The notes under the pieces were generated by a model, which saw nothing but the letters and a program-made list of their open reading frames with translations, made no database searches and had not been told where the DNA came from. The translations under genes and the position numbers were made by a program. This document shows positions 18,997-58,491 of a stretch of 64,000 bases of DNA, in pieces. How positions within the stretch are numbered: the first letter of the stretch is position 1; each line of letters opens with the position of its first letter. The DNA is taken from assembly GCA_002269645.1 (NCBI GenBank), contig NIVC01000969.1, forward strand, positions 62,001-126,000, read 5' to 3'. Source of the stretch: Macrostomum lignano. Lineage: Eukaryota.

Positions 18997-19104
18997 TTAC
19001 ATCGAAAAGAAATAACAAGACAGCAACAGAACGACAACAATAAGCCGAGAGCCAAAGTTATGAGTGCCATTGTCCAATGCGTTCGGATCAGCTGCTGACA
19101 CCGC
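18997..19104 (-). other. GPI-anchor-signal-like 35-aa tail (AVSAADPNALDNGTHNFGSRLIVVVLLLSCYFFSM*) in a frame shifted one base from exon 6
   Basis: Small-residue cluster (DNG), polar spacer and C-terminal hydrophobic stretch; AT-rich UTR-like sequence with ATTAAA begins right after its TAA. Confidence 0.55.
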
Positions 19105-20642
19105 CTGCGGACGAGGCGGCGGAACCGGATGTAGAGGCGGAACCGGATGTAGAGGCGGAACCGGATGTAGAGGCGGAACCGGATGTAGAAGCGGAACCGG
19201 ATGTAGAGGCGGAACCGGATGAAGCAGCGGAACCGGAAGTAGAGGCGGAACTGGATGTAGAGGCGGAACCGGACGAGGCTGCGGAACCAGATGAAGCGAC
19301 GGAACCGGATGAAGCAGCGGAACCGGAGTTAGAGGCGGAACCGGATGTAGAGGCGGAACCAGATGAAGCAGCGGAACCAGATGAAGCAGCGGAACCAGAT
19401 GTAGAGGCGGAGGCAGACGACGCGGCAGACGCGGTGCTGAGAAAGCCGAGCCGTTTAAGCGAGATTTCAACGTAAGCCGCGCGGTCAGCCCGGCTCCAGT
19501 CCACCATTCGGTCGGGCTGCGTGGCCAGCAGGACCGACCAGCCTCTCCTGGCGTCGGCCACAGCCGGGCACCGGTTATCAAGGTTGAAGTACAGAACACC
19601 GGAAGCGTTGCTGGACTCGCACGGAAGGGCGTCGCCGATGGCGTAGGCAAACGGAGACTCGGCGGCGAACACGCGAGCGGCCGCGAGAAGCTGACGGCTC
19701 CAGCTGGACTGGACAACGCTGTCGCGATCAAAGCTGCCGTTGTAGACCAGCTGCCAGGCCTGGCCGGAGGCGGTAGTCAGCCGCACCCTGACTAGCGGGA
19801 AAGCCAGCGGCCGGGAGCGGAGCAGCTGCGACTTGTAGAACAGGCCGGGCCGGAGGGCGCCTGCGGGGGCGGCGCTGGCCGGGTAGGTCAGCATGCTGTT
19901 GCTAAGCAGCTCGGCCAGCGTCACCGGCATGTCAGCGGAGGCGATGAGACCGGGCAGCCAGCCGTCGGAGTCGGTGGGCACGGACTTGGCCAGCAGTTGC
20001 AGCGAGTCCAGGTCCTCCATCTCTGCCAGGGCGGAGGGCCGGCCGGAGCGGGCGAACCGGAAGCGCGGATACGGGCCCGGCAGGTCCTCGCAGCCGTCCC
20101 GGTCGGTGAGCACCGCCAGGAGGCCTTTGCGGCTGGCGCATCGGGAACCAGCGGCCGCGGTAGCAGTGGAAGTCGAGGCCGAGGCTGCAGTCGATGACGA
20201 GGCGGCCGAGCGAGTCAGGATGGAGAACAGGAGGCTGGGGAAACGGTCACTGCGAAGGCTCCAGCTGAGTTCCAGCGTCTCCTTCACGGACTCGAGTCGC
20301 CAGGGGAAGCTGGCCACCAAGTTGGCGGAGCTGAAGAAGCTGGCAAAGTCGGCGGCGGCGGTCTGGAAGGTGAGGTAGGCGCGGGTTTCGCCTTCCGAGT
20401 TGCGGAAGAGCAGCTTCACCTGGCTGTAGGTGCCGACTGTGAAGTTCCTCAGCGCGACAAACTGCCGCATCTCGGCAGACTCGGCCAAAGACATCCAGGA
20501 GTACGCGGTGCCGCGCAGCAGCGAGTCAAAGACCTCCTGAACGCGGACGCCGGAGCCAGCGCTGATCGTCAGCAGTGGCGAGAAATTGTCCAAGTTGGCG
20601 AGCTCCTGGCAGCTGGCGAGGGCTTTCTGGGTGCTGACGAAG
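19088..20642 (-). CDS. Exon 6 (last) of the large secreted mucin-like/VWA gene: two tandem extracellular modules plus S/A/G/T 6-aa repeat tract
   Basis: Acceptor CTCATCGCAG|C at 20642 (phase 2, matching the exon 5 donor); open to TGA at 19090-19088. Confidence 0.75.
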
Positions 20643-20702
20643 CTGCGATGAGGTGCGCCAGGGGGTTGAGAGGAGTTGAATGCAATGATCTTAACTAGAC
20701 TG

Positions 20703-21112
20703 CCAATCCAGGCCAACACACAGCCAATCCAGGCCAACACACAGCCAATCCAGGCCAACACACAGCCAATCCAGGCCAACACACAGCCAATCCAGGCCAA
20801 CACACAGCCAATCCAGGCCAACACACAGCCAATCCAGGCCAACACACAGCCAATCCAGGCCAATACACAGCCAATCCAGGCCAACACACAGCCAATCCAG
20901 GCCAACACACAGCCAATCCAGGCCAACACACAGCCAATCCAGGCCAACACACAGCCAATCCAGGCCAACACACAGCCAATCCAGGCCAACACACAGCCAA
21001 TCCAGGCCAACACACAGCCAATCCAGGCCAACACACAGCCAATCCAGGCCAACACACAGCCAATCCAGGCCAACACACAGACAATCCAGGCCAACACACA
21101 GCCAATCCAGGC
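20703..21112. repeat. 21-bp minisatellite (CCAATCCAGGCCAACACACAG), ~19 copies, in intron 5
   Basis: Direct reading. Confidence 0.95.
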
Positions 21113-21141
21113 ACAAGAGCTGGAAACAAGTCCGAACGCAC

Positions 21142-21666
21142 CTGGCCACCTCAGAGCTGTTGGTGCCAGCCTTCATGGACTCAATCTGGGTCTTCAACGA
21201 GGAAATTCTTGCTGCCATGTCGCTGTTGAGCAGCAGCACATCCTGGATGCGGGCTTCCTTCTCCTGCACCATCGCCTCGGAGTTGCTGGCGGCCATGCGC
21301 TTCAGCAGCAGCTCCTGGGTGAGCGTCTGCAGCGACTGCCAGGCCGCGGAAATCTGCGCCTCCAGCGTGGCAATCTTGGAGTCTTCGGCGACCACCTTCG
21401 CCTCCTGGTCGCGTCGCAGGGCTTCCAAACGGTCATCGGCCGAGCCAATTTGCACCAGAGTCTCCCGGAGCAGCGACACCAGCTGGCTCTTCTTCACTGT
21501 GAGGCTCTGCACCCGCTGCTCGAGCTGGCGCACCTGGACCAGGCTGGTCTCGTAGTCCTCCGCGCTGAACGCCTGGCTGCGCATGGAGTGCAGTCTGTCC
21601 AGCTGGTCCTGCAGCCGCTGCACCGTGGCCTTGTAGTGCGACACCATGCGGCTGCACAGCTCCAGC
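21142..21666 (-). CDS. Exon 5: coiled-coil segment
   Basis: Acceptor AACTCCAG|G (phase 2) and donor GCCAG|GTGCGT (phase 2); heptad-rich text (VQRLQDQLDRL...LEAQISAAWQSLQTL). Confidence 0.75.
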
Positions 21667-22036
21667 CTGGAGTTCACCGGCAAACATCCGGGTGGGATTT
21701 CAACTGAGTGGGATTCCATTGAGTGGGATTACACTGTTCAGGATCTAGTTTTAGTACCGGGTTGTACTGTCTCCCCAAACTAAAATGTTTTTGCAAAGCT
21801 AAACAAGAGGCCACAGGCAAGTAAAGTTCTTGGATGAGAGAGCTAGTACTTCATTCCGCATCATTGAGCAGGTTCCGAAATTTCTGCACTTTACGAGAGG
21901 ACTGAAAATGTGGAAAATCCCTGATTGTAAAGTTTTGGCTCTCGAAGGAAAGCATTGAAAATCTTGACATAATGGGTTTGGTAGTGGATAAGCTTTGGTT
22001 TCGAGTCAAATTCAGATTAGTTGTTAGGTCAGCCAA

Positions 22037-22470
22037 GGTCATCAACAAGTCAGTAGGTCAACTGGGGGTCATCAACAAGTCAGTAGGTCAACTGGGGTCA
22101 TCAACAAGTCAGTAAATCAACTGAGGGTCATCAACAAGTCAGTAGGTCAACTGGGGGTCATCAACAAGTCAGTAGGTCAACTGGGGTCATCAACAAGTCA
22201 GTAGACCAACTGAGGGTCATCAACAAGTCAGTAGGTCAACTGGGGTCATCAACAAGTCAGTAGGTCAACTGGGGTCATCAACAAGTCAGTAGGTCAACTG
22301 GGGGTCATCAACAAGTCAGTAGGTCAACTGGGGTCATCAACAAGTCAGTAGGTCAACTGGGGGTCATCAACAAGTCAGTAGGTCAACTGGGGTCATCAAC
22401 AAGTCAGTAGATCAACTGAGGGTCATCAACAAGTCAGTAGGTCAACTGGGGGTCATCAACAAGCCAGCAG
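22037..22470. repeat. 29-30-bp minisatellite (GGTCATCAACAAGTCAGTAGGTCAACTGG[G]), ~15 copies, in intron 4
   Basis: Direct reading. Confidence 0.95.
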
Positions 22471-22481
22471 ATCAGCCTCAC

Positions 22482-23137
22482 CGAATCTGCTTGCTCTCGA
22501 ACTGGTATTGCAGAGTCTCCAGGCTCTCCTGCAGCTGGCTGATGCTGGCGTACACGCTGTACAGCCAGGCCTCGTACTGGTGCACCGAGTCCTGCAGGTA
22601 GCGCAGAAAGCCCTGCCGGATAGCCAGGCTGCTCCTGGCCGAGTTGCACTCCCGGTAGCACTGCGGGAACAGCAGCTGGACGCCTCTGGTGGACAGCAGA
22701 TAGTAGGAGCTCAGCTCAGCCAGGTTGCCTGGCGTGGAGACAAAGCCGACGGCCTCGGAGTGCAGCGCCGGGTTCCACGTGGAGCTGAGACTCAAGAAGT
22801 AGGCGTTGGTGCCGGTGGGCAGCAGCGAGGCCGCCTCCTTCAGGCTCCGACCGCTGTTTGTGACGCTGTCGGTGATGACCACAACGTTGCGGCGGGCATC
22901 AGGGCGGCTGACCTGATGCAGCATAGAGGCTGCAGCCGCCACCGCCTCGCCTGTGGCCGTGGCCGAGTCCTCGTCGTAGCGCAGCAGCAGCAGCCGGCGG
23001 AAGAAAACGTCCACAGTCGGACACTCGTCCGGGTTGATGACGCGGAGGACGCGGCCGCTGTAGAAGACGGCGCCGAACTGGACAGCTGCGGGCCCGTAGC
23101 TCAGCTGGCTGGCCAGGCGGGCCATGAAGGAAGCAAC
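22482..23137 (-). CDS. Exon 4: body of the von Willebrand factor A domain and start of the coiled coil
   Basis: Acceptor TCTCCCAG|GTT (phase 0) and donor ATTCG|GTGAGG (phase 2); VWA hallmarks VQFGAVFYS, TATGEAV, RRNVVVITDS. Confidence 0.85.
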
Positions 23138-23198
23138 CTGGGAGACGGTGCGATTAGGTGTTGTTCAGTGAGGGTTCGGTGAGGGACGGCGAGGGATT

Positions 23199-23590
23199 GG
23201 CGAGAAATGACACGAGGGTTCGGCGAGAAATGGCAAGAGGGCTCGGTGAGAAATGGCAAGAGGGTTCGGCGAGAAATGGCAAGAGGTTTCGGCGAGAAAT
23301 GGCAAGAGAGTTCGGCGAGAAATGACAAGAGGGCTCGGCGAGAAATGACACGAGGGTTCGGCGAGAAATGGCAAGAGGGCTCGGTGAGAAATGGCAGGAG
23401 GGTTCGGCGAGAAATGGCAAGAGGTTTCGGCGAGAAATGGCATGAGGGTTCGGCGAGAAATGGCAAGAGGGTTCGGCGAGAAATGGCAAGAGGGTTCGGC
23501 GAGAAATGGCAAGAGAGTTCGGCGAGAAATGGCAAGAGAGTTCGGCGAGAAATAGCACGAGGGTTCGGTGAGAACTGGCATGAGGGTTCG
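23199..23590. repeat. 23-bp minisatellite (GGCGAGAAATGGCAAGAGGGTTC), ~17 copies, in intron 3
   Basis: Direct reading. Confidence 0.9.
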
Positions 23591-23873
23591 GCAGGAGTCG
23601 GCGAGTGTGGGGGTCGAATCTCGCGCAGATAGACGGAGACCGGTTTCTGGCTTGTTTGCCTTCGTCAGTTAGCAATAGCCATACACCGTCCCCTCCCACC
23701 AGTCTCAGTTTATACAGACATTTCTTATATGGCGGCATCTTGCAGGTTATACAAGAAATTCTACGATTCAAATCTTTATAATTTATCTACTTTTCTTAGT
23801 AGTCTATATTGAATCTCTCACGGCTGGTGTTTGGCACGAGTCAACAAGGGTTAGACAAGAGTCGGTGAGGGTT

Positions 23874-24070
23874 AGGCGAGAGTCAGTAGAGATTCGGCGA
23901 GAGTCAGTAGAGATTCGGCGAGAGTCAGTAGAGATTCGGCGAGAGTCGATAGAGATTCGGCGAGAGTCGGTAGAGATTCGGCGAGAGTCAGTAGAGATTC
24001 GGCGAGAGTCGATAGAGATTCGGCGAGAGTCAGTAGAGATTCGGCGAGAGTCAGTAGAGATTCTGCGAGA
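23874..24070. repeat. 21-bp minisatellite (GGCGAGAGTCAGTAGAGATTC), ~9 copies, in intron 3
   Basis: Direct reading; shares the TTCGGCGAGA core with the neighbouring array. Confidence 0.9.
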
Positions 24071-24120
24071 GCCGGTGAGGATTAGGGAAATCGGTAGGGA
24101 TATCAAAGCATCAGGTTCAC

Positions 24121-26181
24121 CTGAAATCTGATCTGAAAAGGCGACTTGGCTCGGTTGGTGTCCACAACAAAGACAATGTAGTTCTGGCCGGGAAAGCAGG
24201 CGGCAGCGGTGCCGGTCCATTTCTGCTGCCGGCAGGCGTACTGGCAGCCCTCCGTCAGCTGGGGCAGCTCGCCGCGACGGCAGGTGACCACCGGGGCTGG
24301 GCAGACGCGGTAGCGGCGGAGGCGGCAGCCATCATCCAGTTGGAGCCACTCGGAGCTGAACTCGACAGGAGACTGGCGCCACGGCTGCACAGGACAGCCC
24401 TTTGCGTCCAGCGGAATGGGAGTGGATGAGCTGGTGGAGCCTGAAGACGAGGTCGAACCAAAAACAGAGCCGGCAGTTGAAGCAGAGCCGGCAGTTGAAG
24501 CAGAGCCGGCAGTTGAAGCAGAGCCGGCAGTTGAAGCAGAGCCGGCAGTTGAAGCAGAGCCGGCAGTTGAAGCAGAGCCGGCAGTTGAAGCAGAGCCAGC
24601 AGTTGAAGCAGAGCCGGCAGATGAGGCAGAGCCGGCAGTTGAAGCAGAGCCAGCAGTTGAAGCAGAGCCGGCAGATGAGGCAGAGCCGGCAGTTGAAGCA
24701 GAGCCGGCAGTTGAAGCAGAGCCGGCAGATGAGGCAGAGCCGGCAGTTGAAGCAGCGCCGGCAGATAAGGCAGAGCCGGAATTTGAAGCAGAGCCGGCAG
24801 TTGAAGCAGAGCCGGCAGTTGAAGCAGAGCCGGCAGATGAGGCAGAGCCGGCAGATGAGGCAGAGCCGGCAGTTGAAGCAGAGCCAGCAGTTGAAGCAGA
24901 GCCGGCAGATGAGGCAGAGCCGGCAGTTGAAGCAGAGCCGGCAGATGAGGCAGAGCCGGCAGATGAGGCAGAGCCGGCAGTTGAAGCAGAGCCAGCAGTT
25001 GAAGCAGAGCCGGCAGATGAGGCAGAGCCGGCAGTTGAAGCAGAGCCGGCAGTTGAAGCAGAGCCGGCAGATGAGGCAGAGCCGGCAGATGAGGCAGAGC
25101 CGGCAGTTGAAGCAGAGCCAGCAGTTGAAGCAGAGCCGGCAGATGAGGCAGAGCCGGCAGTTGAAGCAGAGCCGGCAGTTGAAGCAGAGCCGGCAGATGA
25201 GGCAGAGCCGGCAGTTGAAGCAGCGCCGGCAGATAAGCCAGAGCCGGAATTTGAAGCAGAGCCGGCAGTTGAAGCAGAGCCGGCAGTTGAAGCAGAGTCA
25301 GCAGTTGAAGCAGAGCCAGCAGTTGAAGCAGAGCCGGCAGATGAGGCAGAGCCGGCAGTTGAAGCAGAGCCGGCAGATGAGGCAGAGCCGGCAGTTGAAG
25401 CAGAGCCGGCAGTTGAAGCAGAGCCGGCAGATGAGGCAGAGCCGGCAGTTGAAGCAGAGCCGGCATATGAAGCAGAGCCGGCAGATGAAGCAGAACCAGC
25501 AGTTGAGCCAGAACCAGTAAGACGGCCAGAACCAGCAGTTGAGCCAGAACCAGTAAGACGGCCAGAACCAGCAGTTGAGCCAGAACCAGTAAGACGGCCA
25601 GAACCAGCAGTTGAGCCAGAACCAGTAAGACGGCCAGAACCAGCAGTTGAGCCAGAACCAGTAAGACGGCCAGAACCAGCAGTTGAGCCAGAACCAGTAA
25701 GACGGCCAGAACCAGCAGTTGAGCCAGAACCAGTAAGACGGCCAGAACCAGCAGTTGAGCCAGAACCAGTAAGACGGCCAGAACCAGCAGTTGAGCCAGA
25801 ACCAGTAAGACGGCCAGAACCAGCAGTTGAGCCAGAACCAGTAAGACGGCCAGAACCAGCAGTTGAGCCAGAACCAGTAAGACGGCCAGAACCAGCAGTT
25901 GAGCCAGAACCAGCAGGCAAGGAGCCGGCAGCAGTAGTAGCAGAGGTTTTAGTGGACGAAAACGAGCTTGAAGACGCCGATGCAGCGGAAGAAGCCGATG
26001 AGGAGGATGTGGAAATGTGGTGGCTCGATTCCATGGCCAGTGCAATCTGTTTGCAGTCAAATTGCTGGCACTGGAGCCACTTGGTTGGCCGGGGCGTCTC
26101 GCGGTAGCCGGCCGGACAGGCTGGACGCTCGGCCGGACAGTCGACGCAGGTGAGGCTGGGGCAGCCGTGAGCGTCAATCAC
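24121..26181 (-). CDS. Exon 3: Cys-rich repeats, ~500-aa S/A/G/T mucin-like VNTR, Cys-rich linker and first strand of the VWA domain
   Basis: Acceptor TTAAACTCAG|GTG and donor TTTCAG|GTGAAC, both phase 0; 2061 nt open; ends [21 protein letters not shown]. Confidence 0.85.
24468..25915. repeat. Coding VNTR: 18-bp units ([12 protein letters not shown]) plus 11 copies of a 36-bp unit ([12 protein letters not shown])
   Basis: Unit lengths are multiples of 3; GTAAGACGGCC recurs every 36 bp from 25517 to 25877. Confidence 0.9.
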
Positions 26182-26271
26182 CTGAGTTTAAGTGGGTTGG
26201 ATGGTGGAGAGCTTTAGGCGTTGCGGGGGGGGGGCTTTTAATAGCGAAGCATTGCTGATTCCAGATTTCCG

Positions 26272-29200
26272 AGGGAGACACAGGTAGACAGGGAACCGAG
26301 AGACACAGGTAGACAGGGAACAGAGAGACACAGGTAGACATTGAACAGAGAGAGAGACACAGGTAGACAGGGAACAGAGAGACACAGGTAGACAGGGAAC
26401 AGAGACAGGTAGACAGGGAACAGAGACAGGTAGACAGGAAACAGAGAGAGACACAGGTAGACAGGGAACAGAGAGAGAGACACAGGTAGACAGGGAACAG
26501 AGAGAGACACAGGTAGACAGGGAACAGAGAGAGAGACACAGGTAGACATTGAACAGAGAGAGAGACACAGGTAGACAGGGAACAGAGAGAGACACAGGTA
26601 GACAGGGAACAGAGAGAGACACAGGTAGACAGGGAACAGAGAGAGACACAGGTAGACAGGGAACAGAGAGAGACACAGGTAGACAGGGAACAGAGAGAGA
26701 GACACAGGTAGACAGGGAACAGAGAGAGACACAGGTAGACAGGGAACAGAGAGAGACACAGGTAGACAGGGAACAGAGAGAGACACAGGTAGACAGGGAA
26801 CAGAGAGAGACACAGGTAGACAGGGAACAGAGACACACAGGTAGACAGGGAACAGAGAGACACAGGTAGACAGGGAACAGAGAGACACAGGTAGACAGGG
26901 AACAGAGAGACACAGGTAGACAGGGAACAGAGAGAGACACAGGTAGACAGGGAACAGAGACACACAGGTAGACAGGGAACAGAGAGAGAGACACAGGTAG
27001 ACAGGGAACAGAGAGACACAGGTAGACAGGGAACAGAGACAGGTAGACAGGGAACAGAGAGAGAGACACAGGTAGACAGGGAACAGAGAGAGACACAGGT
27101 AGACAGGGAACAGAGACAGGTAGACAGGGAACAGAGAGAGAGACACAGGTAGACAGGGAACAGAGAGAGAGAAACAGGTAGACAGGGAACAGAGAGAGAG
27201 ACACAGGTAGACATTGAACAGAGAGAGAGACACAGGTAGACAGGGAACAGAGAGAGACACAGGTAGACAGGGAACAGAGACAGGTAGACAGGGAACAGAG
27301 AGAGAGAGACACAGGTAGACAGGGAACAGAGAGAGACACAGGTAGACATTGAACAGAGAGAGAGACACAGGTAGACAGGGAACAGAGAGAGACACAGGTA
27401 GACAGGGAACAGAGAGAGACACAGGTAGACAGGGAACAGAGACAGGTAGACAGGGAACAGAGAGAGAGACACAGGTAGACAGGGAACAGAGAGAGACACA
27501 GGTAGACAGGGAACAGAGAGAGAGACACAGGTAGACATTGAACAGAGAGAGAGACACAGGTAGACAGGGAACAGAGAGAGACACAGGTAGACAGGGAACA
27601 GAGAGAGAGACACAGGTAGACAGGGAACAGAGAGAGAGACACAGGTAGACATTGAACAGAGAGAGAGACACAGGTAGACAGGGAACAGAGAGAGAGACAC
27701 AGGTAGACAGGGAACAGAGAGAGACACAGGTAGACAGGGAACAGAGAGAGACACAGGTAGACAGGGAACAGAGAGAGACACAGGTAGACAGGGAACAGAG
27801 AGAGACACAGGTAGACAGAGAACAGAGAGAGACACAGGTAGACAGGGAACAGAGACACACAGGTAGACAGGGAACAGAGAGACACAGGTAGACAGGGAAC
27901 AGAGACAGGTAGACAGGGAACAGAGAGAGAGACACAGGTAGACAGGGAACAGAGAGAGACACAGGTAGACAGGGAACAGAGAGAGAGACACAGGTAGACA
28001 TTGAACAGAGAGAGAGACACAGGTAGACAGGGAACAGAGAGAGACACAGGTAGACAGGGAACAGAGAGAGACACAGGTAGACAGGGAACAGAGAGAGAGA
28101 CACAGGTAGGCAGGGAACAGAGAGAGACACAGGTAGACAGGGAACAGAGAGAGACACAGGTAGACAGGGAACAGAGACAGGTAGACAGGGAACAGAGAGA
28201 GAGACACAGGTAGACAGGGAACAGAGAGAGACACAGGTAGACAGGGAACAGAGAGAGAGACACAGGTAGACATTGAACAGAGAGAGACACAGGTAGACAG
28301 GGAACAGAGACACACAGGTAGACAGGGAACAGAGAGAGAGACACAGGTAGACATTGAACAGAGAGAGAGACACAGGTAGACAGGGAACAGAGAGAGAGAC
28401 ACAGGTAGACAGGGAACAGAGACACACAGGTAGACAGGGAACAGAGAGAGAGACACAGGTAGACAGGGAACAGAGACAGGTAGACAGGGAACAGAGAGAG
28501 AGAGACACAGGTAGACAGGGAACAGAGAGAGACACAGGTAGACAGGGAACAGAGAGAGACACAGGTAGACAGGGAACAGAGAGAGAGACACAGGTAGACA
28601 GGGAACAGAGAGAGACACAGGTAGACAGGGAACAGAGAGAGACACAGGTAGACAGGGAACAGAGACAGGTAGACAGGGAACAGAGAGAGAGACACAGGTA
28701 GACAGGGAACAGAGAGAGAGACACAGGTAGACATTGAACAGAGAGAGAGACACAGGTAGACAGGGAACAGAGAGAGACACAGGTAGACAGGGAACAGAGA
28801 GAGAGACACAGGTAGACAGGGAACAGAGAGAGACACAGGTAGACAGGGAACAGAGAGAGACACAGGTAGACAGGGAACAGAGACAGGTAGACAGGGAACA
28901 GAGAGAGAGACACAGGTAGACAGGGAACAGAGAGAGACACAGGTAGACAGGGAACAGAGAGAGAGACACAGGTAGACATTGAACAGAGAGAGAGACACAG
29001 GTAGACAGGGAACAGAGAGAGAGACACAGGTAGACAGGGAACAGAGACACACAGGTAGACAGGGAACAGAGAGAGACACAGGTAGACAGGGAACAGAGAG
29101 ACACAGGTAGACAGGGAACAGAGACAGGTAGACAGGGAACAGAGAGAGAGAGACACAGGTAGACAGGGAACAGAGAGAGACACAGGTAGACAGGGAACAG

Positions 29201-41200: not shown

Positions 41201-44200
41201 GAGAGACACAGGTAGACAGGGAACAGAGAGAGACACAGGTAGACAGGGAACAGAGAGAGAGACACAGGTAGACAGGGAACAGAGAGAGAGACACAGGTAG
41301 ACAGAACAGAGAGAGAGACACAGGTAGACATTGAACAGAGAGAGAGACACAGGTAGACAGGGAACAGAGAGAGAGACACAGGTAGACAGGGAACAGAGAG
41401 AGAGACACAGGTAGACATTGAACAGAGAGAGAGACACAGGTAGACAGGGAACAGAGAGAGACACAGGTAGACAGGGAACAGAGACACACAGGTAGACAGG
41501 GAACAGAGAGAGAGACACAGGTAGACAGGGAACAGAGAGACACAGGTAGACAGGGAACAGAGACAGGTAGACAGGGAACAGAGACAGGTAGACAGGGAAC
41601 AGAGAGAGAGAGACACAGGTAGACAGGGAACAGAGAGAGACACAGGTAGACAGGGAACAGAGAGAGACACAGGTAGACAGGGAACAGAGAGAGAGACACA
41701 GGTAGACAGGGAACAGAGAGAGACACAGGTAGACAGGGAACAGAGAGAGACACAGGTAGACAGGGAACAGAGAGACACAGGTAGACAGGGAACAGAGACA
41801 GGTAGACAGGGAACAGAGAGAGAGACACAGGTAGACAGGGAACAGAGAGAGACACAGGTAGACAGGGAACAGAGAGAGAGACACAGGTAGACATTGAACA
41901 GAGAGAGAGACACAGGTAGACAGGGAACAGAGAGAGACACAGGTAGACAGGGAACAGAGAGAGACACAGGTAGACAGGGAACAGAGACAGGTAGACAGGG
42001 AACAGAGAGAGAGACACAGGTAGACAGGGAACAGAGACAGGTAGACAGGGAACAGAGAGAGAGACACAGGTAGACATTGAACAGAGAGAGAGACACAGGT
42101 AGACAGGGAACAGAGAGAGACACAGGTAGACAGGGAACAGAGAGAGACACAGGTAGACAGGGAACAGAGAGAGACACAGGTAGACAGGGAACAGAGACAC
42201 ACAGGTAGACAGGGAACAGAGAGAGAGACACAGGTAGACAGGGAACAGAGAGAGACACAGGTAGACAGGGAACAGAGAGAGACACAGGTAGACAGGGAAC
42301 AGAGAGAGACACAGGTAGACAGGGAACAGAGAGAGACACAGGTAGACAGGGAACAGAGAGAGACACAGGTAGACAGGGAACAGAGAGAGACACAGGTAGA
42401 CAGGGAACAGAGAGAGACACAGGTAGACAGGGAACAGAGACAGGTAGACAGGGAACAGAGACAGGTAGACAGGAAACAGAGAGAGACACAGGTAGACAGG
42501 GAACAGAGAGAGACACAGGTAGACAGGGAACAGAGAGAGACACAGGTAGACAGGGAACAGAGAGAGAGACACAGGTAGACAGGGAACAGAGAGAGAGACA
42601 CAGGTAGACAGGGAACAGAGAGAGACACAGGTAGACAGGGAACAGAGAGAGACACAGGTAGACAGGGAACAGAGAGAGACACAGGTAGACAGGGAACAGA
42701 GAGACACAGGTAGACAGGGAAGAGAGACACACAGGTAGACAGGGAACAGAGAGAGACACAGGTAGACAGGGAACAGAGAGAGAGACACAGGTAGACAGGG
42801 AACAGAGAGAGACACAGGTAGACAGGGAACAGAGAGAGACACAGGTAGACAGGGAACAGAGACACAGGTAGACAGGGAACAGAGAGAGAGACACAGGTAG
42901 ACAGGGAACAGAGAGAGACACAGGTAGACAGGGAACAGAGAGAGACACAGGTAGACAGGGAACAGAGAGACACAGGTAGACAGGGAACAGAGACAGGTAG
43001 ACAGGGAACAGAGAGAGAGACACAGGTAGACAGGGAACAGAGAGAGACACAGGTAGACAGGGAACAGAGAGAGAGACACAGGTAGACAGGGAACAGAGAG
43101 AGAGACACAGGTAGACAGGGAACAGAGAGAGACACAGGTAGACAGGGAACAGAGAGAGACACAGGTAGACAGGGAACAGAGAGAGAGACACAGGTAGACA
43201 GGGAACAGAGAGAGAGACACAGGTAGACAGGGAACAGAGAGAGACACAGGTAGACAGGGAACAGAGAGAGACACAGGTAGACAGGGAACAGAGACAGGTA
43301 GACAGGGAACAGAGAGAGACAGGGAACAGAGAGAGACACAGGTAGACAGGGAACAGAGAGAGAGACACAGGTAGACAGAACAGAGAGAGAGACACAGGTA
43401 GACAGGGAACAGAGAGAGAGACACAGGTAGACAGGGAACAGAGAGAGACACAGGTAGACAGGGAACAGAGAGACACAGGTAGACAGGGAACAGAGACAGG
43501 TAGACAGGGAACAGAGAGAGAGACACAGGTAGACAGGGAACAGAGAGAGACACAGGTAGACAGGGAACAGAGAGAGAGACACAGGTAGACAGAACAGAGA
43601 GAGAGACACAGGTAGACAGGGAACAGAGAGAGACACAGGTAGACAGGGAACAGAGAGAGACACAGGTAGACAGGGAACAGAGACAGGTAGACAGGGAACA
43701 GAGAGAGAGACACAGGTAGACAGGGAACAGAGAGAGACACAGGTAGACAGGGAACAGAGAGAGAGACACAGGTAGACAGAACAGAGAGAGAGACACAGGT
43801 AGACAGGGAACAGAGAGAGACACAGGTAGACAGGGAACAGAGAGAGACACAGGTAGACAGGGAACAGAGAGAGACACAGGTAGACAGGGAACAGAGAGAG
43901 ACACAGGTAGACAGGGAACAGAGAGAGACACAGGTAGACAGGGAACAGAGAGAGACACAGGTAGACAGGGAACAGAGAGAGACACAGGTAGACAGGGAAC
44001 AGAGAGAGACACAGGTAGACAGGGAACAGAGAGAGACACAGGTAGACAGGGAACAGAGAGAGAGACACAGGTAGACAGGGAACAGAGACAGGTAGACAGG
44101 GAACAGAGAGAGAGACACAGGTAGACAGGGAACAGAGAGAGACACAGGTAGACAGGGAACAGAGAGAGAGACACAGGTAGACAGGGAACAGAGAGAGAGA

Positions 44201-46427
44201 CACAGGTAGACAGGGAACAGAGAGAGACACAGGTAGACAGGGAACAGAGAGAGACACAGGTAGACAGGGAACAGAGACAGGTAGACAGGGAACAGAGACA
44301 GGTAGACAGGGAACAGAGAGAGAGACACAGGTAGACAGGGAACAGAGACAGGTAGACAGGGAACAGAGAGAGAGACACAGGTAGACAGAACAGAGAGAGA
44401 GACACAGGTAGACAGGGAACAGAGAGAGACACAGGTAGACAGGGAACAGAGAGAGACACAGGTAGACAGGGAACAGAGAGAGAGACACAGGTAGACAGGG
44501 AACAGAGACACACAGGTAGACAGGGAACAGAGAGAGAGACACAGGTAGACAGGAAACAGAGAGAGACACAGGTAGACAGGGAACAGAGAGAGACACAGGT
44601 AGACAGGGAACAGAGAGAGAGACACAGGTAGACAGGGAACAGAGAGAGACACAGGTAGACAGGGAACAGAGAGAGACACAGGTAGACAGGGAACAGAGAG
44701 AGACACAGGTAGACAGGGAACAGAGAGAGACACAGGTAGACAGGGAACAGAGACAGGTAGACAGGGAACAGAGACAGGTAGACAGGAAACAGAGAGAGAC
44801 ACAGGTAGACAGGGAACAGAGAGAGAGACACAGGTAGACAGGGAACAGAGAGAGACACAGGTAGACAGGGAACAGAGAGAGAGACACAGGTAGACATTGA
44901 ACAGAGAGAGAGACACAGGTAGACAGGGAACAGAGAGAGACACAGGTAGACAGGGAACAGAGAGACACAGGTAGACAGGGAACAGAGAGAGACACAGGTA
45001 GACAGGGAACAGAGACACACAGGTAGACAGGGAAGAGAGACACACAGGTAGACAGGGAAGAGAGACACACAGGTAGACAGGGAACAGAGAGAGAGACACA
45101 GGTAGACAGGGAACAGAGAGAGACACAGGTAGACAGGGAACAGAGAGAGACACAGGTAGACAGGGAACAGAGACACACAGGTAGACAGGGAACAGAGAGA
45201 GAGACACAGGTAGACAGGGAACAGAGAGAGACACAGGTAGACAGGGAACAGAGAGAGAGACACAGGTAGACAGGGAACAGAGAGACACAGGTAGACAGGG
45301 AACAGAGACAGGTAGACAGGGAACAGAGAGAGAGACACAGGTAGACAGGGAACAGAGAGAGACACAGGTAGACAGGGAACAGAGAGAGAGACACAGGTAG
45401 ACATTGAACAGAGAGAGAGACACAGGTAGACAGGGAACAGAGAGAGACACAGGTAGACAGGGAACAAAGAGAGACACAGGTAGACAGGGAACAGAGAGAG
45501 AGACACAGGTAGACAGGGAACAGAGAGAGAGACACAGGTAGACAGGGAACAGAGAGAGACACAGGTAGACAGGGAACAGAGAGAGACACAGGTAGACAGG
45601 GAACAGAGACAGGTAGACAGGGAACAGAGAGAGAGACACAGGTAGACAGGGAACAGAGAGAGACACAGGTAGACAGGGAACAGAGAGAGAGACACAGGTA
45701 GACATTGAACAGAGAGAGAGACACAGGTAGACAGGGAACAGAGAGAGAGACACAGGTAGACAGGGAACAGAGAGAGACACAGGTAGACAGGGAACAGAGA
45801 GACACAGGTAGACAGGGAACAGAGACAGGTAGACAGGGAACAGAGAGAGAGACACAGGTAGACAGGGAACAGAGAGAGACACAGGTAGACAGGGAACAGA
45901 GAGAGAGACACAGGTAGACATTGAACAGAGAGAGAGACACAGGTAGACAGGGAACAGAGAGAGACACAGGTAGACAGGGAACAGAGAGAGACACAGGTAG
46001 ACAGGGAACAGAGAGAGACACAGGTAGACAGGGAACAGAGAGAGACACAGGTAGACAGGGAACAGAGAGAGACACAGGTAGACAGGGAACAGAGACACAC
46101 AGGTAGACAGGGAACAGAGAGAGAGACACATGTAGACAGGGAACAGAGAGAGACACAGGTAGACAGGGAACAGAGAGAGACACAGGTAGACAGGGAACAG
46201 AGAGAGACACAGGTAGACAGGGAACAGAGAGAGACACAGGTAGACAGGGAACAGAGAGAGAGACAGGTAGACAGGGAACAGAGAGAGACACAGGTAGACA
46301 GGGAACAGAGAGAGACACAGGTAGACAGGGAACAGAGAGAGACACAGGTAGACAGGGAACAGAGAGAGACACAGGTAGACATTGAACAGAGAGAGAGACA
46401 CAGGTAGACAGGGAACAGAGAGACACA
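26272..46427. repeat. ~20.1-kb satellite: fixed core CAGGTAGACAGGGAACA plus variable (GA)n(CA)m; units 21-31 bp, roughly 750 copies; fills intron 2
   Basis: Direct reading; copy number estimated from length divided by ~27. Confidence 0.97.
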
Positions 46428-46441
46428 GCAGAGCGTCTCAC

Positions 46442-46839
46442 CTGTTGCACCTGTTGTGAGCCGGCGGTGCAATTCGGCAGGGCGGTCCCGGAGGCAACGC
46501 AGGCGGCCGGCAGATCGCGACAGCCGGGCGGGCGGCTCCCAGCAGACGGGCAGGGCAGGCAGAACTGAGCGGAGCAGCCGTCAATGCGGAGGCTGGCCAG
46601 GTGGAACAGGCCAGGCTGACAGTCTGCGGCCTCGAAGTCCAGCTGGCCGCGGCGGCTGCAGCCGGGCCTGGCGGCGCAGGCCTCCTGGTCGCGGCAGGGC
46701 CGGCAGGTCGCCGTCTTGCAGCCGTTGGCGTCCAGGCTGAACTCGGCGGTGGTGCCGGGGCTGCACAGCACCAGCGGCTCCGGGCAGGGGCGGCGGCACT
46801 CGGCGGGCAGCTGAGCCTCCGACGAATTCAGGCGGGCTG
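46442..46839 (-). CDS. Exon 2: Cys-rich repeats
   Basis: Tandem acceptor CAGCAG (46839 or 46836, both phase 1) and donor CAACAG|GTGAGA (phase 0); translates AARLNSSEAQLPAECRRPCPEPLVLCSPG...NCTAGSQQVQQ. Confidence 0.85.
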
Positions 46840-46876
46840 CTGAGCCAGGATTTGCATTCTATTGGCTTTTTGTGAA

Positions 46877-47425
46877 TTCTGTGAATTAGTCCCTGTGAAT
46901 CAGTCCCTGTGAATCAGTCCGTGTGAATCAGTCCGTGTGAATCAGTCCCTGTGAATCAGTCCCTGTGAATCAGTCCCTGTGAATCAGTCCCTGTGAATCA
47001 GTCCCTGTGAATCAGTCCCTGTGAATCAGTCCCTGTGAATCAGTCCCTGTGAATCAGTCCCTGTGAATCAGTCCCTGTGAATCAGTCCCTGTGAATCAGT
47101 CCCTGTGAATCAGTCCCTGTGAATCAGTCCCTGTGAATCAGTCCCTGTGAATCAGTCCCTGTGAATCAGTCCCTGTGAATCAGTCCCTGTGAATCAGTCC
47201 CTGTGAATCAGTCCCTGTGAATCAGTCCCTGTGAATCAGTCCCTGTGAATCAGTCCCTGTGAATCAGTCCCTGTGAATCAGTCCCTGTGAATCAGTCCCT
47301 GTGAATCAGTCCCTGTGAATCAGTCCCTGTGAATCAGTCCCTGTGAATCAGTCCGTGTGAATCAGTCCCTGTGAATCAGTCCCTGTGAATCAGTCCCTGT
47401 GAATCAGTTCCTGTGAATCAGTCCC
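46877..47425. repeat. 14-bp minisatellite (CTGTGAATCAGTCC), ~39 copies, in intron 1
   Basis: Direct reading. Confidence 0.95.
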
Positions 47426-47436
47426 AGCGAACGCAC

Positions 47437-48526
47437 CCGCCATCTCGCAGCTGGCGCACTCCACCTGAAGGCAGCCCCCTTCAGCAGCGGGCGCAGCTCG
47501 GCGGTACTGCCCGGCGGAGCAGGCCACCGCCCAGTCCGGCTGGCTGCCGCAGTCTTCACTCGGTCGGCAGGCCGGCAGGTCGCGGTGTTTGAAGTCGCAG
47601 TCGCGGCAGCTCCACGGCTGGCAGTGTCCGACCGGATTGTCCGCCCTAAACTGGCCGGCCGGACAGGACACCGGCAGGGTGTTGTTCGGACAGGTCTCGC
47701 AAATCCAGTGGCAGGTGGCGAGGCCACTGCTGGAGTCCCGCAGCAGCTGCTTGGCGGGCTGGCGGCCAGGCGGGCAGTCGGGCTTGTTTGCCTCTGTGCA
47801 GCCCGGCGCCGAGCAGCCAGACCGGTCGGCGGTGTCGGGGGTGCAGTCGGCGCACCCGGCCAGCGGACAGCCGGTCTCTGGGTCAGATTCGGTTCGGACA
47901 TACTGGCCGGAGGGGCAGACTGGCTCGGACAGTAGCGGACAGGCGGCACAGGAGGACAGCTGGCAGCCAAGAGAGTCGTTGAATCGACGGAGGAACTGGC
48001 CGGAGCCGCAGGCGGGGGGCTTCGCAGCCTGCGGCGGGCAGCGGCAGCCGTGGCGGAGGCCCATGAGAGCCGGGGCGCAGGGCAGGCAGGCGAGCGACGA
48101 ACAGCCGGCATCCTCGGCCTCGCCCAAGAACTGGCCAGCCGGACATTGGCCGGTAAAGTCGGCCGGCGGAGCTATTGGTGGGCAGTCGAGGCCGCGGCAT
48201 TCGGACCGGTGGCTGGAGGTCAGGCCGCACGGCTGGCAGGCGTCAGCGGGGCATCCAGCCGGGTCGAAGCTGACCTTGTGAAAGTTGCCGGGCGGGCAGT
48301 TGATGGAGCGGATGGTGGGGCAGCGAATCTCCGGGGGCAGAGGCTGGGAGTCGGCGATGATGGGGAAGCTGGGACTCGGAGGCGGCAGTGTGGTCGGGGC
48401 TTGGCCGGCATGAACTGTGGATGCCGGGAGCAGCTGGGCAGCTGCTGGTTGGGACAGCTGGCACAGGGCCAGACAGCTAAGCAGAAGGGTGGCAACGGCT
48501 GGGAGCCGCCGCAGTCTGTGCAACAT
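47437..48526 (-). CDS. Exon 1: signal peptide and Cys-rich repeats of the large secreted mucin-like/VWA protein
   Basis: AAACCATG start; MLHRLRRLPAVATLLLSCLALCQLSQPAAAQ has n/h/c regions; donor GGCGG|GTGCGT (phase 1). Confidence 0.85.
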
Positions 48527-52918: not shown

Positions 52919-53680
52919 TCAGAGAGCCTTAAGCGACACGTAGCTCTGCAGCTGGTTGGGCAGCGGCAGCTTATTAACCTTGTGCTTCATAGAGTCAGTG
53001 TGCCCCAGAGCCCGTTGGATCTCGTTGCGGCACAGCCGTTTCAAAGAGCGCACGTTGCACTCCTCCCTGTGCAGCCAGTCGGAGAAGTCCTGATCAGCGT
53101 AGATGATCTTGTCCGGTATGATCTGGTTCTCCAACAGCCAGCGGGTGAAGGCCTGCAGGTTGAGCGGGTCGCAGCCGTGCGACAGCAGCAGCTTGACCAT
53201 GGGGATGTCCAGCTTGGGGAACTTCACGGCCATGTGCAACGGCGCCAAGCCGTCCTTGTCGCAGCGGTTCACCTGGGCGCCGTGCTTGATGAGCTTGTCG
53301 GCGATGGCCAGGTGGCCGTGCAGCACGGCGATGTACAGAGGAGTTTTGCCGTTGCGGTCGGCGGCGTTCACGTCGGAGCCGTGGCGCAGCAGCAGGTCGA
53401 CAATGTCGGTGCGGCCGTGATAGGTGGCCACGTACAGCGGGGTCTTCTTGTGCGTGTCCGGCTGGTCAACGTCAGCCTCGGAGCGGAGCAGAGCCTGCAC
53501 AATCTCCAGGTGGCCAAAGTAGGCAGCGATGTACATTGGCGATTTCAGCTCCTTGTTGGGCAGGTGAACATCGGCGCCCTTGGAGAGGAAATAATTGACA
53601 AGCTCGACATGGCCGCGGCTGGTTGCCAGGTACAGCGGCGACCGGCCGTACGAGTCCGTGCTATTGATTGACGCGTTGCC
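52919..53680 (-). CDS. ASB-family protein exon 3: ankyrin repeats and C-terminal SOCS box
   Basis: Acceptor CCTGTAG|GGC (phase 0); repeats GRSPLYLA, KTPLYVA, GKTPLYIA, GLAPLHMA; SOCS box RSLKRLCRNEI...LPLPNQLQSYV. Confidence 0.92.
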   Translation of the reverse strand, partial: GNASINSTDSYGRSPLYLATSRGHVELVNYFLSKGADVHLPNKELKSPMYIAAYFGHLEIVQALLRSEADVDQPDTHKKTPLYVATYHGRTDIVDLLLRHGSDVNAADRNGKTPLYIAVLHGHLAIADKLIKHGAQVNRCDKDGLAPLHMAVKFPKLDIPMVKLLLSHGCDPLNLQAFTRWLLENQIIPDKIIYADQDFSDWLHREECNVRSLKRLCRNEIQRALGHTDSMKHKVNKLPLPNQLQSYVSLKAL

Positions 53681-54207
53681 CTACAGGTAGGCGGCAGGTA
53701 AGTATGCTCAAACTTTCATTAGGATTCCCTTAAAGACGAAGTGGCAATGCGCCTGGCCCAAGGACTACTTTAGTAAAGGGAAGGGAAACTACGGTTCTTG
53801 GAACATTATCAGGCAGGCTTTACCGAAGAAAAAATACATTACGGAGATTGGATTTCATTTGGTCAGCACAAATATTTTTATTGCTTTTGATACGAGTAAG
53901 AAGCAGACACAATGTTCATTTTCGATTCTGGGGCGACGCAAGCGACTCTGGGACGCTTCTTCATCGGGACGCTTCTTCATCGTCTTCATCGGGTAATGGT
54001 TAGCACTGGCCATCTATAGATTGCGAATAGGGAGTGTCTATAAATATAAACAAATCAATTCCTTGGCTGACACAGAGGGAGTCAAATTTTACCGCTAGGT
54101 AGCTAATAGCTACAAAGCCAGGCTCCACTGGATCGATGCAGTCAAACTGGCGCACCTCATAAGGCTGGAAAATCAATGTAATCCAATCTATAATACTTCT
54201 CTCTCAC

Positions 54208-54720
54208 CTGTCCTAATAGGAGCTGAGTCATTGACAGGCAGCCAGTGTAGGCAGCGTGGTGCAGAGCAGTCATGCCCTGCTTGTCAGTCTTGCTGGCTGA
54301 GCTGCCGGCGGCCAGAAGCAGGGCTGCCAAGCCCACTCCGCTGGCGCCCAGCTCGGCGGCAATCATGAGCGGCGTCATGCCGATCTGGTCGGTGTCCTCC
54401 AGCCGCAGCGACTCCGACTTCAGCAGGGCGCCAACTACCGCCTCGCGTCGGTCCTTCACCGCTGAGGTGAGCGCCGTGTCGCCGCTCTCGCTTTTCAGGT
54501 TGACATTGACGCTGGGGAACTGAACCATCTCGGCGGCGATCTGGGCGCTGGCCCGGTGCAGCGGGGCCAGGCCGTCGGTGTCCAGCAGGTTGGGATTGCA
54601 GTCGTTTTGCAGCAGGGCTCGGCAGGTGGCGCGGTACTTCTCAGAGGTCTGCGTGGCTATGAGGTGCAGCCCCGTTTGCAAGTGCTGGTTGCGCATGTTC
54701 ACGTCCGCGTTGGACTTCAC
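54208..54720 (-). CDS. ASB-family protein exon 2: ankyrin repeats
   Basis: Acceptor CGTCCAG|GTG and donor GGACAG|GTGAGA; 513 nt, phase 0/0; QTGLH, GLAPLH, GDTAL, GMTPLMIAA, GMTALHHAA. Confidence 0.92.
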
Positions 54721-54764
54721 CTGGACGGATGGGGGTTGGGTGCTCAATAATCCTGTTGGTGGGG

Positions 54765-58395: not shown

Positions 58396-58491
58396 GTAGA
58401 AAAATTGAGAGCCTGGAAGGTTAACCAGAGAAGAAGTGCAGTATCGAACATGCTTCTGTGGCTGGCATAGTTAATCTAACAAACAACTGAC

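What the first reader, a model, noticed from the sequence alone, without database searches (positions are those of the whole stretch)
18997..48526. Large modular secreted or surface protein: Cys-repeats, mucin tract, VWA, coiled coil, twin module, stalk, (GPI)
Six exons (48526-47437, 46839-46442, 26181-24121, 23137-22482, 21666-21142, 20642-19088) join with canonical GT-AG sites and consistent phases (1,0,0,2,2) into 6285 nt, or 2094 aa. Two junctions rebuild motifs: QQVQQ|[15 protein letters not shown] completes a Cys repeat across the 20-kb intron, and IVFVVDT...FQ|VASFM completes the VWA domain. I do not recognise this architecture. It fits a disulfide-crosslinked, O-glycosylated, oligomeric glycocalyx, mucus or adhesive component. 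The fragmented ORF track hides it.
Basis: partly seen in the sequence, partly recalled or inferred. Interest (0 to 1): 0.85.

Follow-up and report, generated by a model that had tools for sequence, protein, structure and literature searches.

The report
Flatworm gene for large secreted protein
The six proposed exons do join into one real gene of the flatworm Macrostomum lignano that encodes a roughly 2,090-residue secreted, cysteine-rich, serine-rich protein with a VWA domain and a long helical stretch; the public genome record already carries a 2,081-residue gene ending at the same stop codon, and its function is unknown.

Summary
The six minus-strand exons join through five GT-AG introns into 6,285 nt (2,094 aa) with only the terminal stop. 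Both motif-rebuilding junctions are real. The 20-kb "intron" is a non-coding 27-nt satellite.

The window is Macrostomum lignano Mlig_3_7 (NIVC01000969.1:62001-126000). A gene already on record there ends at the same stop codon, on the same strand, with a 2,081-aa product. So the gene is not hidden. Thirteen residues differ from the model, at a place I could not locate.

Supported parts of the architecture:
- signal peptide and no transmembrane segment;
- eleven 4-Cys beta-hairpin repeats that match no Pfam family;
- a 540-aa Ser/Ala/Gly/Thr tract without proline;
- a VWA domain with a degenerate metal-binding site;
- about 220 aa with heptad periodicity;
- about 400 aa of orphan C-terminal sequence, then a Ser-rich tail.

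Unsupported parts:
- the "twin module" (no similarity between the two halves);
- the GPI anchor (no hydrophobic C-terminus in frame; a GPI-like tail exists only in the +1 frame).

It is not Mlig-ap1 or Mlig-ap2. None of 12 tryptic peptides appears in the held part of the published footprint data. The most likely reading is a lineage-restricted, oligomeric secreted glycoprotein. Interest is moderate to low.

The parts
47437..48526 (-). Exon 1 (1,090 nt). It holds the ATG at 48526, the signal peptide (aa 1-30, 48526-48437), a Pro-rich linker, and Cys-repeat units 1-7 plus the start of unit 8.
   Evidence: The most hydrophobic 19-aa window of the whole protein starts at residue 8. The donor is CGG|GTGCGT.
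46840..47436 (-). Intron 1 (597 nt), almost entirely a 14-nt minisatellite of 39 copies.
   Evidence: The acceptor CAG|CAG is a NAGNAG site, so a 3-nt alternative is possible.
46442..46839 (-). Exon 2 (398 nt): Cys-repeat units 8-9 and the first half of unit 10 (...CTAGSQQVQQ).
   Evidence: The donor is CAG|GTGAGA. A second donor, CAG|GTGCAA, lies 9 nt upstream.
26182..46441 (-). Intron 2 (20,260 nt): a 27-nt satellite array of about 746 copies (26271-46427). It is pyrimidine-rich on the transcript strand, free of AG, open in all three frames, and non-coding.
24121..26181 (-). Exon 3 (2,061 nt). It holds the second half of Cys unit 10 and unit 11. It also holds the Ser/Ala/Gly/Thr tract (aa 542-1083, 26046-24421), which includes 11 identical 12-aa units and about 58 six-aa units. 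It ends with a 7-Cys segment (24420-24172) and the first strand of the VWA domain.
23138..24120 (-). Intron 3 (983 nt), with 23-nt and 21-nt minisatellites.
22482..23137 (-). Exon 4 (656 nt): the rest of the VWA domain (the whole VWA is aa 1167-1345, 24171-22652 across intron 3) and the start of the helical region.
21667..22481 (-). Intron 4 (815 nt), with a 30-nt minisatellite.
21142..21666 (-). Exon 5 (525 nt): most of the heptad-periodic helical region (aa 1346-1575 overall, 22651-21147 across intron 4).
20643..21141 (-). Intron 5 (499 nt), with a 21-nt minisatellite.
19088..20642 (-). Exon 6 (1,555 nt). It holds orphan module 1 (aa 1576-1722), a Ser/Ala/Thr linker, orphan module 2 with 4 Cys (aa 1744-1976), and the Ser-rich tail (aa 1977-2094, 19444-19091). 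The TGA stop is at 19090-19088.
   Evidence: The gene on record uses the same stop coordinate.
18997..19087 (-). Sequence after the stop codon. In the +1 frame it would encode ...DPNALDNGTHNFGSRLIVVVLLLSCYFFSM*, which resembles a GPI signal. In the assembled frame it is 3'UTR. An ATTAAA lies at 18978.

Best explanation
This is a genuine, transcribed Macrostomum lignano gene that the deposited genome annotation already models. It has six exons, and a 20-kb satellite fills its second intron. The product is a secreted modular protein of about 2,080-2,094 aa.

The likely mechanism has these steps:
1. The N-terminal signal peptide sends the chain into the secretory pathway. There is no membrane anchor in the assembled frame.
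2. Eleven small 4-Cys beta-hairpin modules form a disulfide-stabilised rod at the N-terminus.
3. A 540-residue Ser/Ala/Gly/Thr tract and a 118-residue Ser-rich tail act as extended spacers and are probably O-glycosylated.
4. The VWA domain has an incomplete metal site (D-T-N-R-A in place of D-x-S-x-S). It therefore probably serves as a metal-independent protein-binding module.
5. The Pro/Gly-poor stretch of about 220 residues, with heptad periodicity, zips chains into parallel oligomers.
6. Two orphan C-terminal modules of unknown fold follow.

The result would be a multivalent, oligomeric extracellular glycoprotein of a matrix, mucus or gland secretion.

Shown: the gene structure, the domain content and the lack of detectable relatives. 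Inferred: secretion, glycosylation, oligomerisation and any biological role.
For: - Gene model: open frame, GT-AG introns; the Cys unit is restored across intron 2; the VWA match is continuous across intron 3.
- a gene on record ends at the same stop with a 2,081-aa product.
- the contig is M. lignano Mlig_3_7, and that assembly's deposited annotation was derived from RNA-seq.
- Secreted: the N-terminus MLHRLRRLPAVATLLLSCLALCQLSQPAAA|Q has the form of a signal peptide, and no 19-aa window elsewhere exceeds Kyte-Doolittle 1.6.
- Cys modules: 58 Cys in 474 aa. The core is C-x2-G-x-[FY]-x7-10-G-C-x4-C-x2-C. An AlphaFold model of one unit, using the other ten as its alignment, gives a beta-hairpin with pLDDT 76-85 in the core.
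- VWA: PF00092, 48.8 bits against a cut-off of 23.8.
- Helical region: 3 Pro/Gly in 230 aa. The heptad signal exceeds the 99th percentile of shuffles over 1351-1420 and 1491-1560.
- Spacers: composition. The repeats are 36-nt units at 100% identity and 18-nt units at 90%.
Against: - I had no expression data, so cell type and function are untested.
- The on-record product is 13 aa shorter than the model.
- AlphaFold without an alignment gave no usable model of the C-terminal 398 aa (pLDDT 34).
- The Ser-rich tracts lack proline, so mucin-type glycosylation is not assured.
- The heptad signal comes in segments rather than one continuous run.
- The window's own proteins did not appear in the protein searches. 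Relatives more than 50% identical to it may therefore be hidden, and 'no relatives' applies only to more distant ones.
Confidence: 0.6

Rival explanations
1. The protein is tethered to the cell surface by a GPI anchor, making it a glycocalyx component. On this reading the true C-terminus is the hydrophobic tail in the +1 frame. The apparent stop at 19088 would then reflect a 1-nt assembly error, or would be bypassed by an alternative splice.
For: - The +1 frame reads ...DPNALDNGTHNFGSR-LIVVVLLLSCYFFSM*. It has small residues (D-N-G) that could serve as an attachment site, a 7-aa spacer and a 15-aa hydrophobic end (Kyte-Doolittle 2.63).
- AT-rich sequence and an ATTAAA follow it directly.
- Formally possible GT..AG splices from the tail repeats into that frame exist.
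Against: - The on-record CDS ends at the same TGA as the model.
- The stretch is T-rich, so all three frames read as hydrophobic there.
- The candidate donors (CCG|GTTCCG) are weak.
Confidence: 0.12
2. It is a component of the duo-gland adhesive secretion (the footprint material) of M. lignano.
For: It shares general features with known flatworm adhesive proteins: large size, high Cys content, large repetitive regions and interaction domains.
Against: - It is neither Mlig-ap1 (5,407 aa; Lys/Arg-rich regions, C-type lectin, vWD/C8/TIL, EGF) nor Mlig-ap2 (14,794 aa; vWD, TIL, LDL receptor domain, TSP-1, 221-255-aa repeats).
- None of 12 tryptic peptides occurs in the held part of the footprint and tail mass-spectrometry tables. 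Those files were truncated when stored, so this evidence is weak.
Confidence: 0.07
3. Two separate genes lie on either side of the satellite, and joining them is an artefact.
For: A 20-kb intron is far above the species average of 1.1-1.4 kb.
Against: - Exon 3 starts in the middle of a Cys unit and has an in-frame TAA 9 nt upstream. Its first Met is 50 residues into the exon (aa 546).
- Exon 2 ends in the middle of a unit at a strong donor.
- The joined unit has the family's spacing.
- The on-record product of 2,081 aa needs about 483 aa from upstream.
Confidence: 0.04
4. The satellite is itself coding, and the gene encodes a giant Cys/Ser/Leu-rich repeat protein.
For: All three minus-strand frames are open for about 20 kb. 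The exon 2 frame reads straight into the satellite (ORF 26174-46771, 6,865 aa).
Against: - The frames are open only because the transcript strand is 4% A.
- Unit lengths differ in 2-nt steps, only 53% of spacings are multiples of 3, and the frames are used evenly.
- The read-through frame ends 7 nt inside exon 3, out of frame with it.
- The on-record product is 2,081 aa.
Confidence: 0.01
5. This is a decaying or redundant duplicate copy. The sequenced DV1 line carries large genome duplications, so the copy here may have no function of its own.
For: [quoted passage not shown]
Against: The 6.3-kb frame is intact, all splice sites are canonical, and the Cys pattern is conserved.
Confidence: 0.06

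Closest known systems
Matrilins (VWA domains plus a C-terminal coiled-coil oligomerisation domain)
   Same: Both are secreted. Both pair a VWA domain with a heptad region that would oligomerise the chains into a multivalent matrix adaptor. This is the closest analogy for how the protein may work.
   Different: Pfam found no EGF domains here. The helical region is about 220 aa long and internal, whereas in matrilins (from my own knowledge) it is a short C-terminal coiled coil. The Cys-hairpin array, the Ser-rich tracts and the 400-aa C-terminal modules have no matrilin counterpart. The VWA metal site is degenerate.
Gel-forming mucins and the VWF family
   Same: Both are very large, Cys-rich and secreted, with long tandem-repeat Ser/Thr-rich tracts that vary at the nucleotide level.
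   Different: Pfam found no VWD, C8, TIL or cystine-knot domains. The tract is Ser/Ala/Gly-rich and lacks proline. The domain here is VWA, not VWD.
Macrostomum lignano adhesive proteins Mlig-ap1 and Mlig-ap2 (Wunderer et al. 2019, PMC6410801)
   Same: Same species. All are large, Cys-rich, repetitive secreted proteins with no close relatives in public databases.
   Different: The sizes and domain sets differ. No peptides of this protein were found in the held footprint data.
Furin-like (FU) repeats such as those of R-spondin, and the similar TNFR and ephrin-receptor-like Cys repeats
   Same: Both share the short C-P-x-G-x-[FY] ... C-x2-C signature and a disulfide-braced beta-hairpin. A profile of the ten unit cores finds R-spondin-1 FU repeats as its best match among solved structures.
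   Different: The match is not significant (E=0.14; Foldseek E>4). No Pfam Cys-repeat family matches at E<1. The 4-Cys core with G-C-x4-C-x2-C is distinctive.
Integrin I domains and collagen VI/VII VWA domains
   Same: They are the best pairwise VWA matches. The beta-A strand, helix alpha-1 and the Thr and Asp of the metal site all align.
   Different: The pairwise E-values are only 0.05-0.2. The D-x-S-x-S loop reads D-T-N-R-A. There is no collagen triple-helix repeat.

Membership tests
VWA domain superfamily (Pfam PF00092) | Profile match above the curated gathering score | tested here: met
   48.8 bits against a cut-off of 23.8, E=1.3e-12, profile positions 2-139 of 174, running across the exon 3/4 junction.
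VWA domain superfamily (Pfam PF00092) | Complete metal-ion-dependent adhesion site (D-x-S-x-S ... T ... D). This defines the metal-binding subset, not the fold. | tested here: not met
   alignment to the integrin alpha-1 I domain: D-G-S-N-S aligns with D-T-N-R-A. The Thr (SATATG) and Asp (ITDSV) positions are kept.
Gel-forming mucin / VWF-like | VWD-C8-TIL assemblies and a C-terminal cystine knot | tested here: not met
   Pfam finds none of these in the N-terminal 553 aa or the C-terminal 897 aa at E<=1.
Gel-forming mucin / VWF-like | Pro/Thr/Ser-rich tandem-repeat domain | tested here: inconclusive
   there are tandem repeats with 48% Ser+Thr, but the main residues are Ser, Ala, Gly and Thr without Pro.
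Matrilin | VWA domain(s), EGF domains and a short C-terminal coiled coil (architecture recalled from my own knowledge) | tested here: not met
   the VWA is present, there is no EGF, and the heptad region is about 220 aa, internal and followed by 500 more residues.
Mlig-ap1 / Mlig-ap2 adhesive proteins | The published domain sets and lengths (5,407 aa and 14,794 aa) | tested here: not met
   One search compared. This was a comparison of domain content only. I did not hold their sequences for a direct alignment.
Furin-like / TNFR / ephrin-receptor-like Cys repeats | Significant profile or fold match | tested here: not met
   no Pfam hit at E<=1. R-spondin-1 at E=0.14. Foldseek E>4.
GPI-anchored protein | C-terminal hydrophobic signal after a small-residue attachment site, in the reading frame | tested here: not met
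   the last 19 aa of the model have a mean hydropathy of 0.10. The GPI-like tail is in the +1 frame only.
Coiled-coil oligomer | Heptad periodicity of hydrophobic residues over at least 4 heptads | tested here: met
   a constant register with a score above the 99th percentile of shuffles over 1351-1420 and 1491-1560. Oligomerisation itself cannot be tested with these tools.
Secreted protein | N-terminal signal peptide and no transmembrane helix | tested here: met
   The test was hydropathy and inspection; no dedicated signal-peptide predictor was available.

The most novel reading that the evidence does not exclude
The gene founds a Macrostomum-restricted class of oligomeric extracellular proteins. 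It would be built from a previously undescribed 4-Cys hairpin repeat and two orphan C-terminal domains. It would be the main structural component of a flatworm secretion or surface coat, possibly with secreted and GPI-anchored forms.
Probability: 0.2. Interest if true: 0.5.

Novelty: new variant of a known kind. Interest (0 to 1): 0.3.

Why it matters
If the protein proves to be a major component of a flatworm secretion or surface coat, it would add new building blocks to the study of invertebrate mucus, matrix and bioadhesives: a 4-Cys hairpin repeat and two orphan domains. Macrostomum lignano is a model where RNAi and transgenesis can test this directly. As it stands, it is one of many lineage-specific, repeat-rich secreted proteins in a very repeat-rich genome, and the public record already carries a gene model for it.

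A by-product may be of wider interest. Every intron of the gene is filled by its own minisatellite, and the 20-kb intron contains no AG dinucleotide on the transcript strand. That makes the locus a natural test case for how splicing copes with huge tandem-repeat introns.

Tried and rejected
- Homology searches found nothing. These were: a word-indexed search of module 1 and of the VWA region; an exhaustive phmmer search of the C-terminal 398 aa against 1.84 billion representatives; sequence searches of solved structures with the Cys array and the C-terminus (the armadillo hits are a chance QQVQQVIDA match); and a metagenome scan. A first search with the 897-aa query timed out.
It returned relatives at 54-74% identity but not the window's own protein, so that route failed.
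- I could not recover the on-record 2,081-aa model. I enumerated single-intron variants, in-frame alternatives for each intron and 39-nt internal GT/GC..AG segments, and found too many candidates. An exact look-up of the 2,094-aa model and of one 2,081-aa variant found neither in the collection.
I first read this as evidence about the annotated protein. I rejected that reading, because the gate may simply accept sequences made of exact window pieces.
- The AlphaFold model of the C-terminal 398 aa was unusable (pLDDT 34), so I ran no fold search on it. The fold search of the Cys unit was not significant.
- 'Twin module' was rejected.
- A coding role for the satellite was rejected.
- Rfam found no RNA family in the window.
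- A literature search for an M. lignano VWA plus coiled-coil protein found nothing relevant.

Full report
**Origin of the window.** A 549-aa intronless ORF in the window (8733-10382, minus strand) is on record, with an identical product, in NCBI assembly GCA_002269645.1. It lies on contig NIVC01000969.1, and record coordinate = window coordinate + 62000. Papers that cite accession NIVC00000000 identify it as the Mlig_3_7 genome of the flatworm Macrostomum lignano. The neighbouring genes fit an animal genome: an ankyrin-repeat/SOCS-box gene on the minus strand (52919-58839) and a FAM184-like exon on the plus strand (62915-63310).

**Check of the observation.** Joining the six proposed minus-strand exons gives 6,285 nt and 2,094 codons with one terminal stop. 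All five introns are GT-AG, with donors GTGCGT, GTGAGA, GTGAAC, GTGAGG and GTGCGT and with YCAG acceptors.

- Junction 2/3. The N-terminal region holds eleven units with the core C-x2-G-x-[FY]-x7-10-G-C-x4-C-x2-C. The unit made by joining exon 2 (...CTAGSQQVQQ) to exon 3 ([15 protein letters not shown]...) has Cys spacings of 16/5/3. Seven other units have 14-16/5/3.
- Junction 3/4. The Pfam VWA match (48.8 bits, cut-off 23.8, E=1.3e-12) starts 15 residues upstream of the junction and continues through it. A pairwise alignment to the integrin alpha-1 I domain is also continuous there.
- Exon 3 cannot stand alone. A TAA lies in frame 9 nt upstream of it, it starts in the middle of a Cys unit, and its first Met is 50 residues into the exon (aa 546).

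**The 20-kb intron.** It is a 27-nt satellite (26271-46427, about 746 copies). All three minus-strand frames are open across it, but only because the transcript strand is 4% A. Unit lengths are 27, 29, 25 and 21 nt, in 2-nt steps. Only 53% of spacings are multiples of three, and the three frames are used equally. It is therefore not coding. The transcript strand has no AG dinucleotide for about 20.18 kb (5 in the whole intron against 122 expected), so no cryptic 3' splice site competes with the real acceptor.

**Existing annotation.** With a 10-kb flank, the same contig look-up lists a second gene on the same strand. Its range ends exactly at window 19088, the last base of the model's stop codon, and its product is 2,081 residues. 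The annotation deposited for Mlig_3_7 came from a genome-guided RNA-seq transcriptome built with StringTie, TACO and TBONE. I take the gene on record to come from that deposit, although the look-up does not state its source.

Exons 3-6 give only 1,598 aa and cannot be extended upstream. About 483 residues must therefore come from upstream exons, and exons 1+2 give 496. So the gene is almost certainly annotated already as one unit across the satellite. I did not see its exon table. Small alternatives exist:
- a NAGNAG acceptor at exon 2;
- a second donor 9 nt upstream of the exon 2 donor;
- a donor 39 nt upstream in exon 5. That particular 2,081-aa variant is not in the collection.

**Architecture** (residue numbers of the 2,094-aa model; window coordinates).
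- aa 1-30: signal-peptide-like N-terminus. It is the most hydrophobic 19-aa window of the protein, and no other window reaches 1.6.
- aa 31-67: Pro-rich linker.
- aa 68-541: eleven Cys units, 58 Cys. Short 4-Cys units and long 6-Cys units are interspersed. An AlphaFold model of one unit, using the other ten as its alignment, gives a beta-hairpin with pLDDT 76-85 in the core. No Pfam family matches at E<=1. A profile of the cores finds R-spondin-1 furin-like repeats as its best solved-structure match, but at E=0.14. Foldseek finds nothing significant.
- aa 542-1083: Ser 36%, Ala 25%, Gly 20%, Thr 12%, no Cys. The tract is encoded by a 36-nt repeat (11.8 copies, 100% identical) and an 18-nt repeat (58 copies, 90% identical).
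- aa 1084-1166: a 7-Cys segment ending in CFPGQNY, an echo of the repeat motif.
- aa 1167-1345: VWA domain. D-T-N-R-A stands in place of D-x-S-x-S, while the Thr and Asp of the metal site are kept.
- aa 1346-1575: only 3 Pro/Gly in 230 residues. The heptad periodicity exceeds the 99th percentile of shuffles over 1351-1420 and 1491-1560.
- aa 1576-1722 and 1744-1976: two modules joined by a Ser/Ala/Thr linker.
- aa 1977-2094: tail with 49% Ser, ending ...SAGGVSS*.

**What is not supported.**
- The two C-terminal modules are not twins. BLASTP gives E=4.6, and the Smith-Waterman score lies below the mean of 500 shuffles.
- There is no GPI signal in frame. The +1 frame beyond the stop does encode ...DPNALDNGTHNFGSRLIVVVLLLSCYFFSM*, followed by AT-rich sequence and an ATTAAA. 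Its last 15 residues have a hydropathy of 2.63. However, that stretch is T-rich and hydrophobic in every frame, and the only splices that reach that frame use weak donors. The on-record CDS also stops at the same TGA. I keep this as a minor rival that read pile-ups could settle.

**Relatives.** Word-indexed searches of module 1 and of the VWA region found nothing. An exhaustive phmmer search of the C-terminal 398 aa against 1.84 billion cluster representatives also found nothing, as did solved-structure sequences and a metagenome scan.

There is a caveat. A search with the neighbouring SOCS-box gene returned relatives at 54-74% identity but not the window's own protein. The window's proteins, and anything clustered with them, therefore seem to be absent from these libraries. 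The result means that no relatives below roughly 50% identity are visible, not that there are no paralogues. AlphaFold without an alignment could not fold the C-terminal region (pLDDT 34).

**Comparison with known proteins.** It is not Mlig-ap1 or Mlig-ap2, the two characterised adhesive proteins of this species. Their sizes and domain sets differ. None of 12 tryptic peptides from non-repetitive parts of the model occurs in the held, truncated mass-spectrometry tables of adhesive footprints and tails, which is weak evidence against a footprint role. Functionally the nearest analogy is a matrilin-type adaptor, a VWA domain plus an oligomerising coiled coil. Compositionally it resembles a mucin-like repeat protein. 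It fails the defining features of both families: no EGF, VWD, C8, TIL or cystine-knot domains, and no proline in the repeat tract.

**Verdict.** Most of the domain reading holds, but two items (twin module, GPI) do not. The claim that the gene is hidden is wrong, because the public record already has a gene of almost the same length here. The protein is best described as a lineage-restricted, secreted, probably oligomeric and glycosylated modular protein of unknown role. That makes it a new variant of a familiar kind rather than a new kind of system.

Noticed in passing
window 20702-21112, 22037-22474, 23170-23592, 23875-24071, 26271-46427, 46879-47425; also 54771-58393: Every intron of the gene is filled almost completely by its own distinct minisatellite (periods 21, 30, 23 and 21, 27, and 14 nt). 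An intron of the neighbouring ankyrin/SOCS-box gene carries a 3.6-kb array of a 30-nt unit. The window holds at least 15 unrelated tandem arrays.
   Followed up: partly
window 26182-46441 (minus strand): On the transcript strand the 20-kb intron is 81% pyrimidine and has no AG dinucleotide for about 20.18 kb (5 in total against 122 expected). No cryptic 3' splice site can form there, and for the same reason all three frames lack stop codons. Whether this reflects selection or is only a by-product of the repeat unit is unknown.
   Followed up: partly
window 18997-19125 (minus strand, +1 frame): Immediately past the stop codon, the +1 frame encodes a GPI-signal-like tail (DNG, a 7-aa spacer, then LIVVVLLLSCYFFSM*), followed by ATTAAA at 18978. 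Reaching it needs a 1-nt frameshift or a splice from a weak donor.
   Followed up: partly
window 8733-10382 (minus strand): An intronless 549-aa ORF is on record as a gene in the deposited assembly. It is Gln/Pro/Ser-rich and has no Pfam match.
   Followed up: partly
window 52919-58839 (minus strand) and 62915-63310 (plus strand): An ankyrin-repeat plus SOCS-box gene has at least three exons. Its relatives at 54-74% identity come from metagenome and sequencing-run assemblies. The first recognisable exon of a FAM184-like gene lies further on.
   Followed up: partly
window 25522-25917 (minus strand): Eleven copies of a 36-nt coding repeat (the 12-aa unit [12 protein letters not shown]) are 100% identical at the nucleotide level. 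This implies either very recent expansion or an assembly effect. The copy number is likely to vary between individuals.
   Followed up: no
window 46836-46839 and 46442-46451 (minus strand): There is a NAGNAG acceptor (CAG|CAG) at exon 2 and tandem donors (CAG|GTGCAA CAG|GTGAGA) at its end. These allow 3-nt and 9-nt isoform differences and may account for part of the 13-aa gap to the on-record product.
   Followed up: partly
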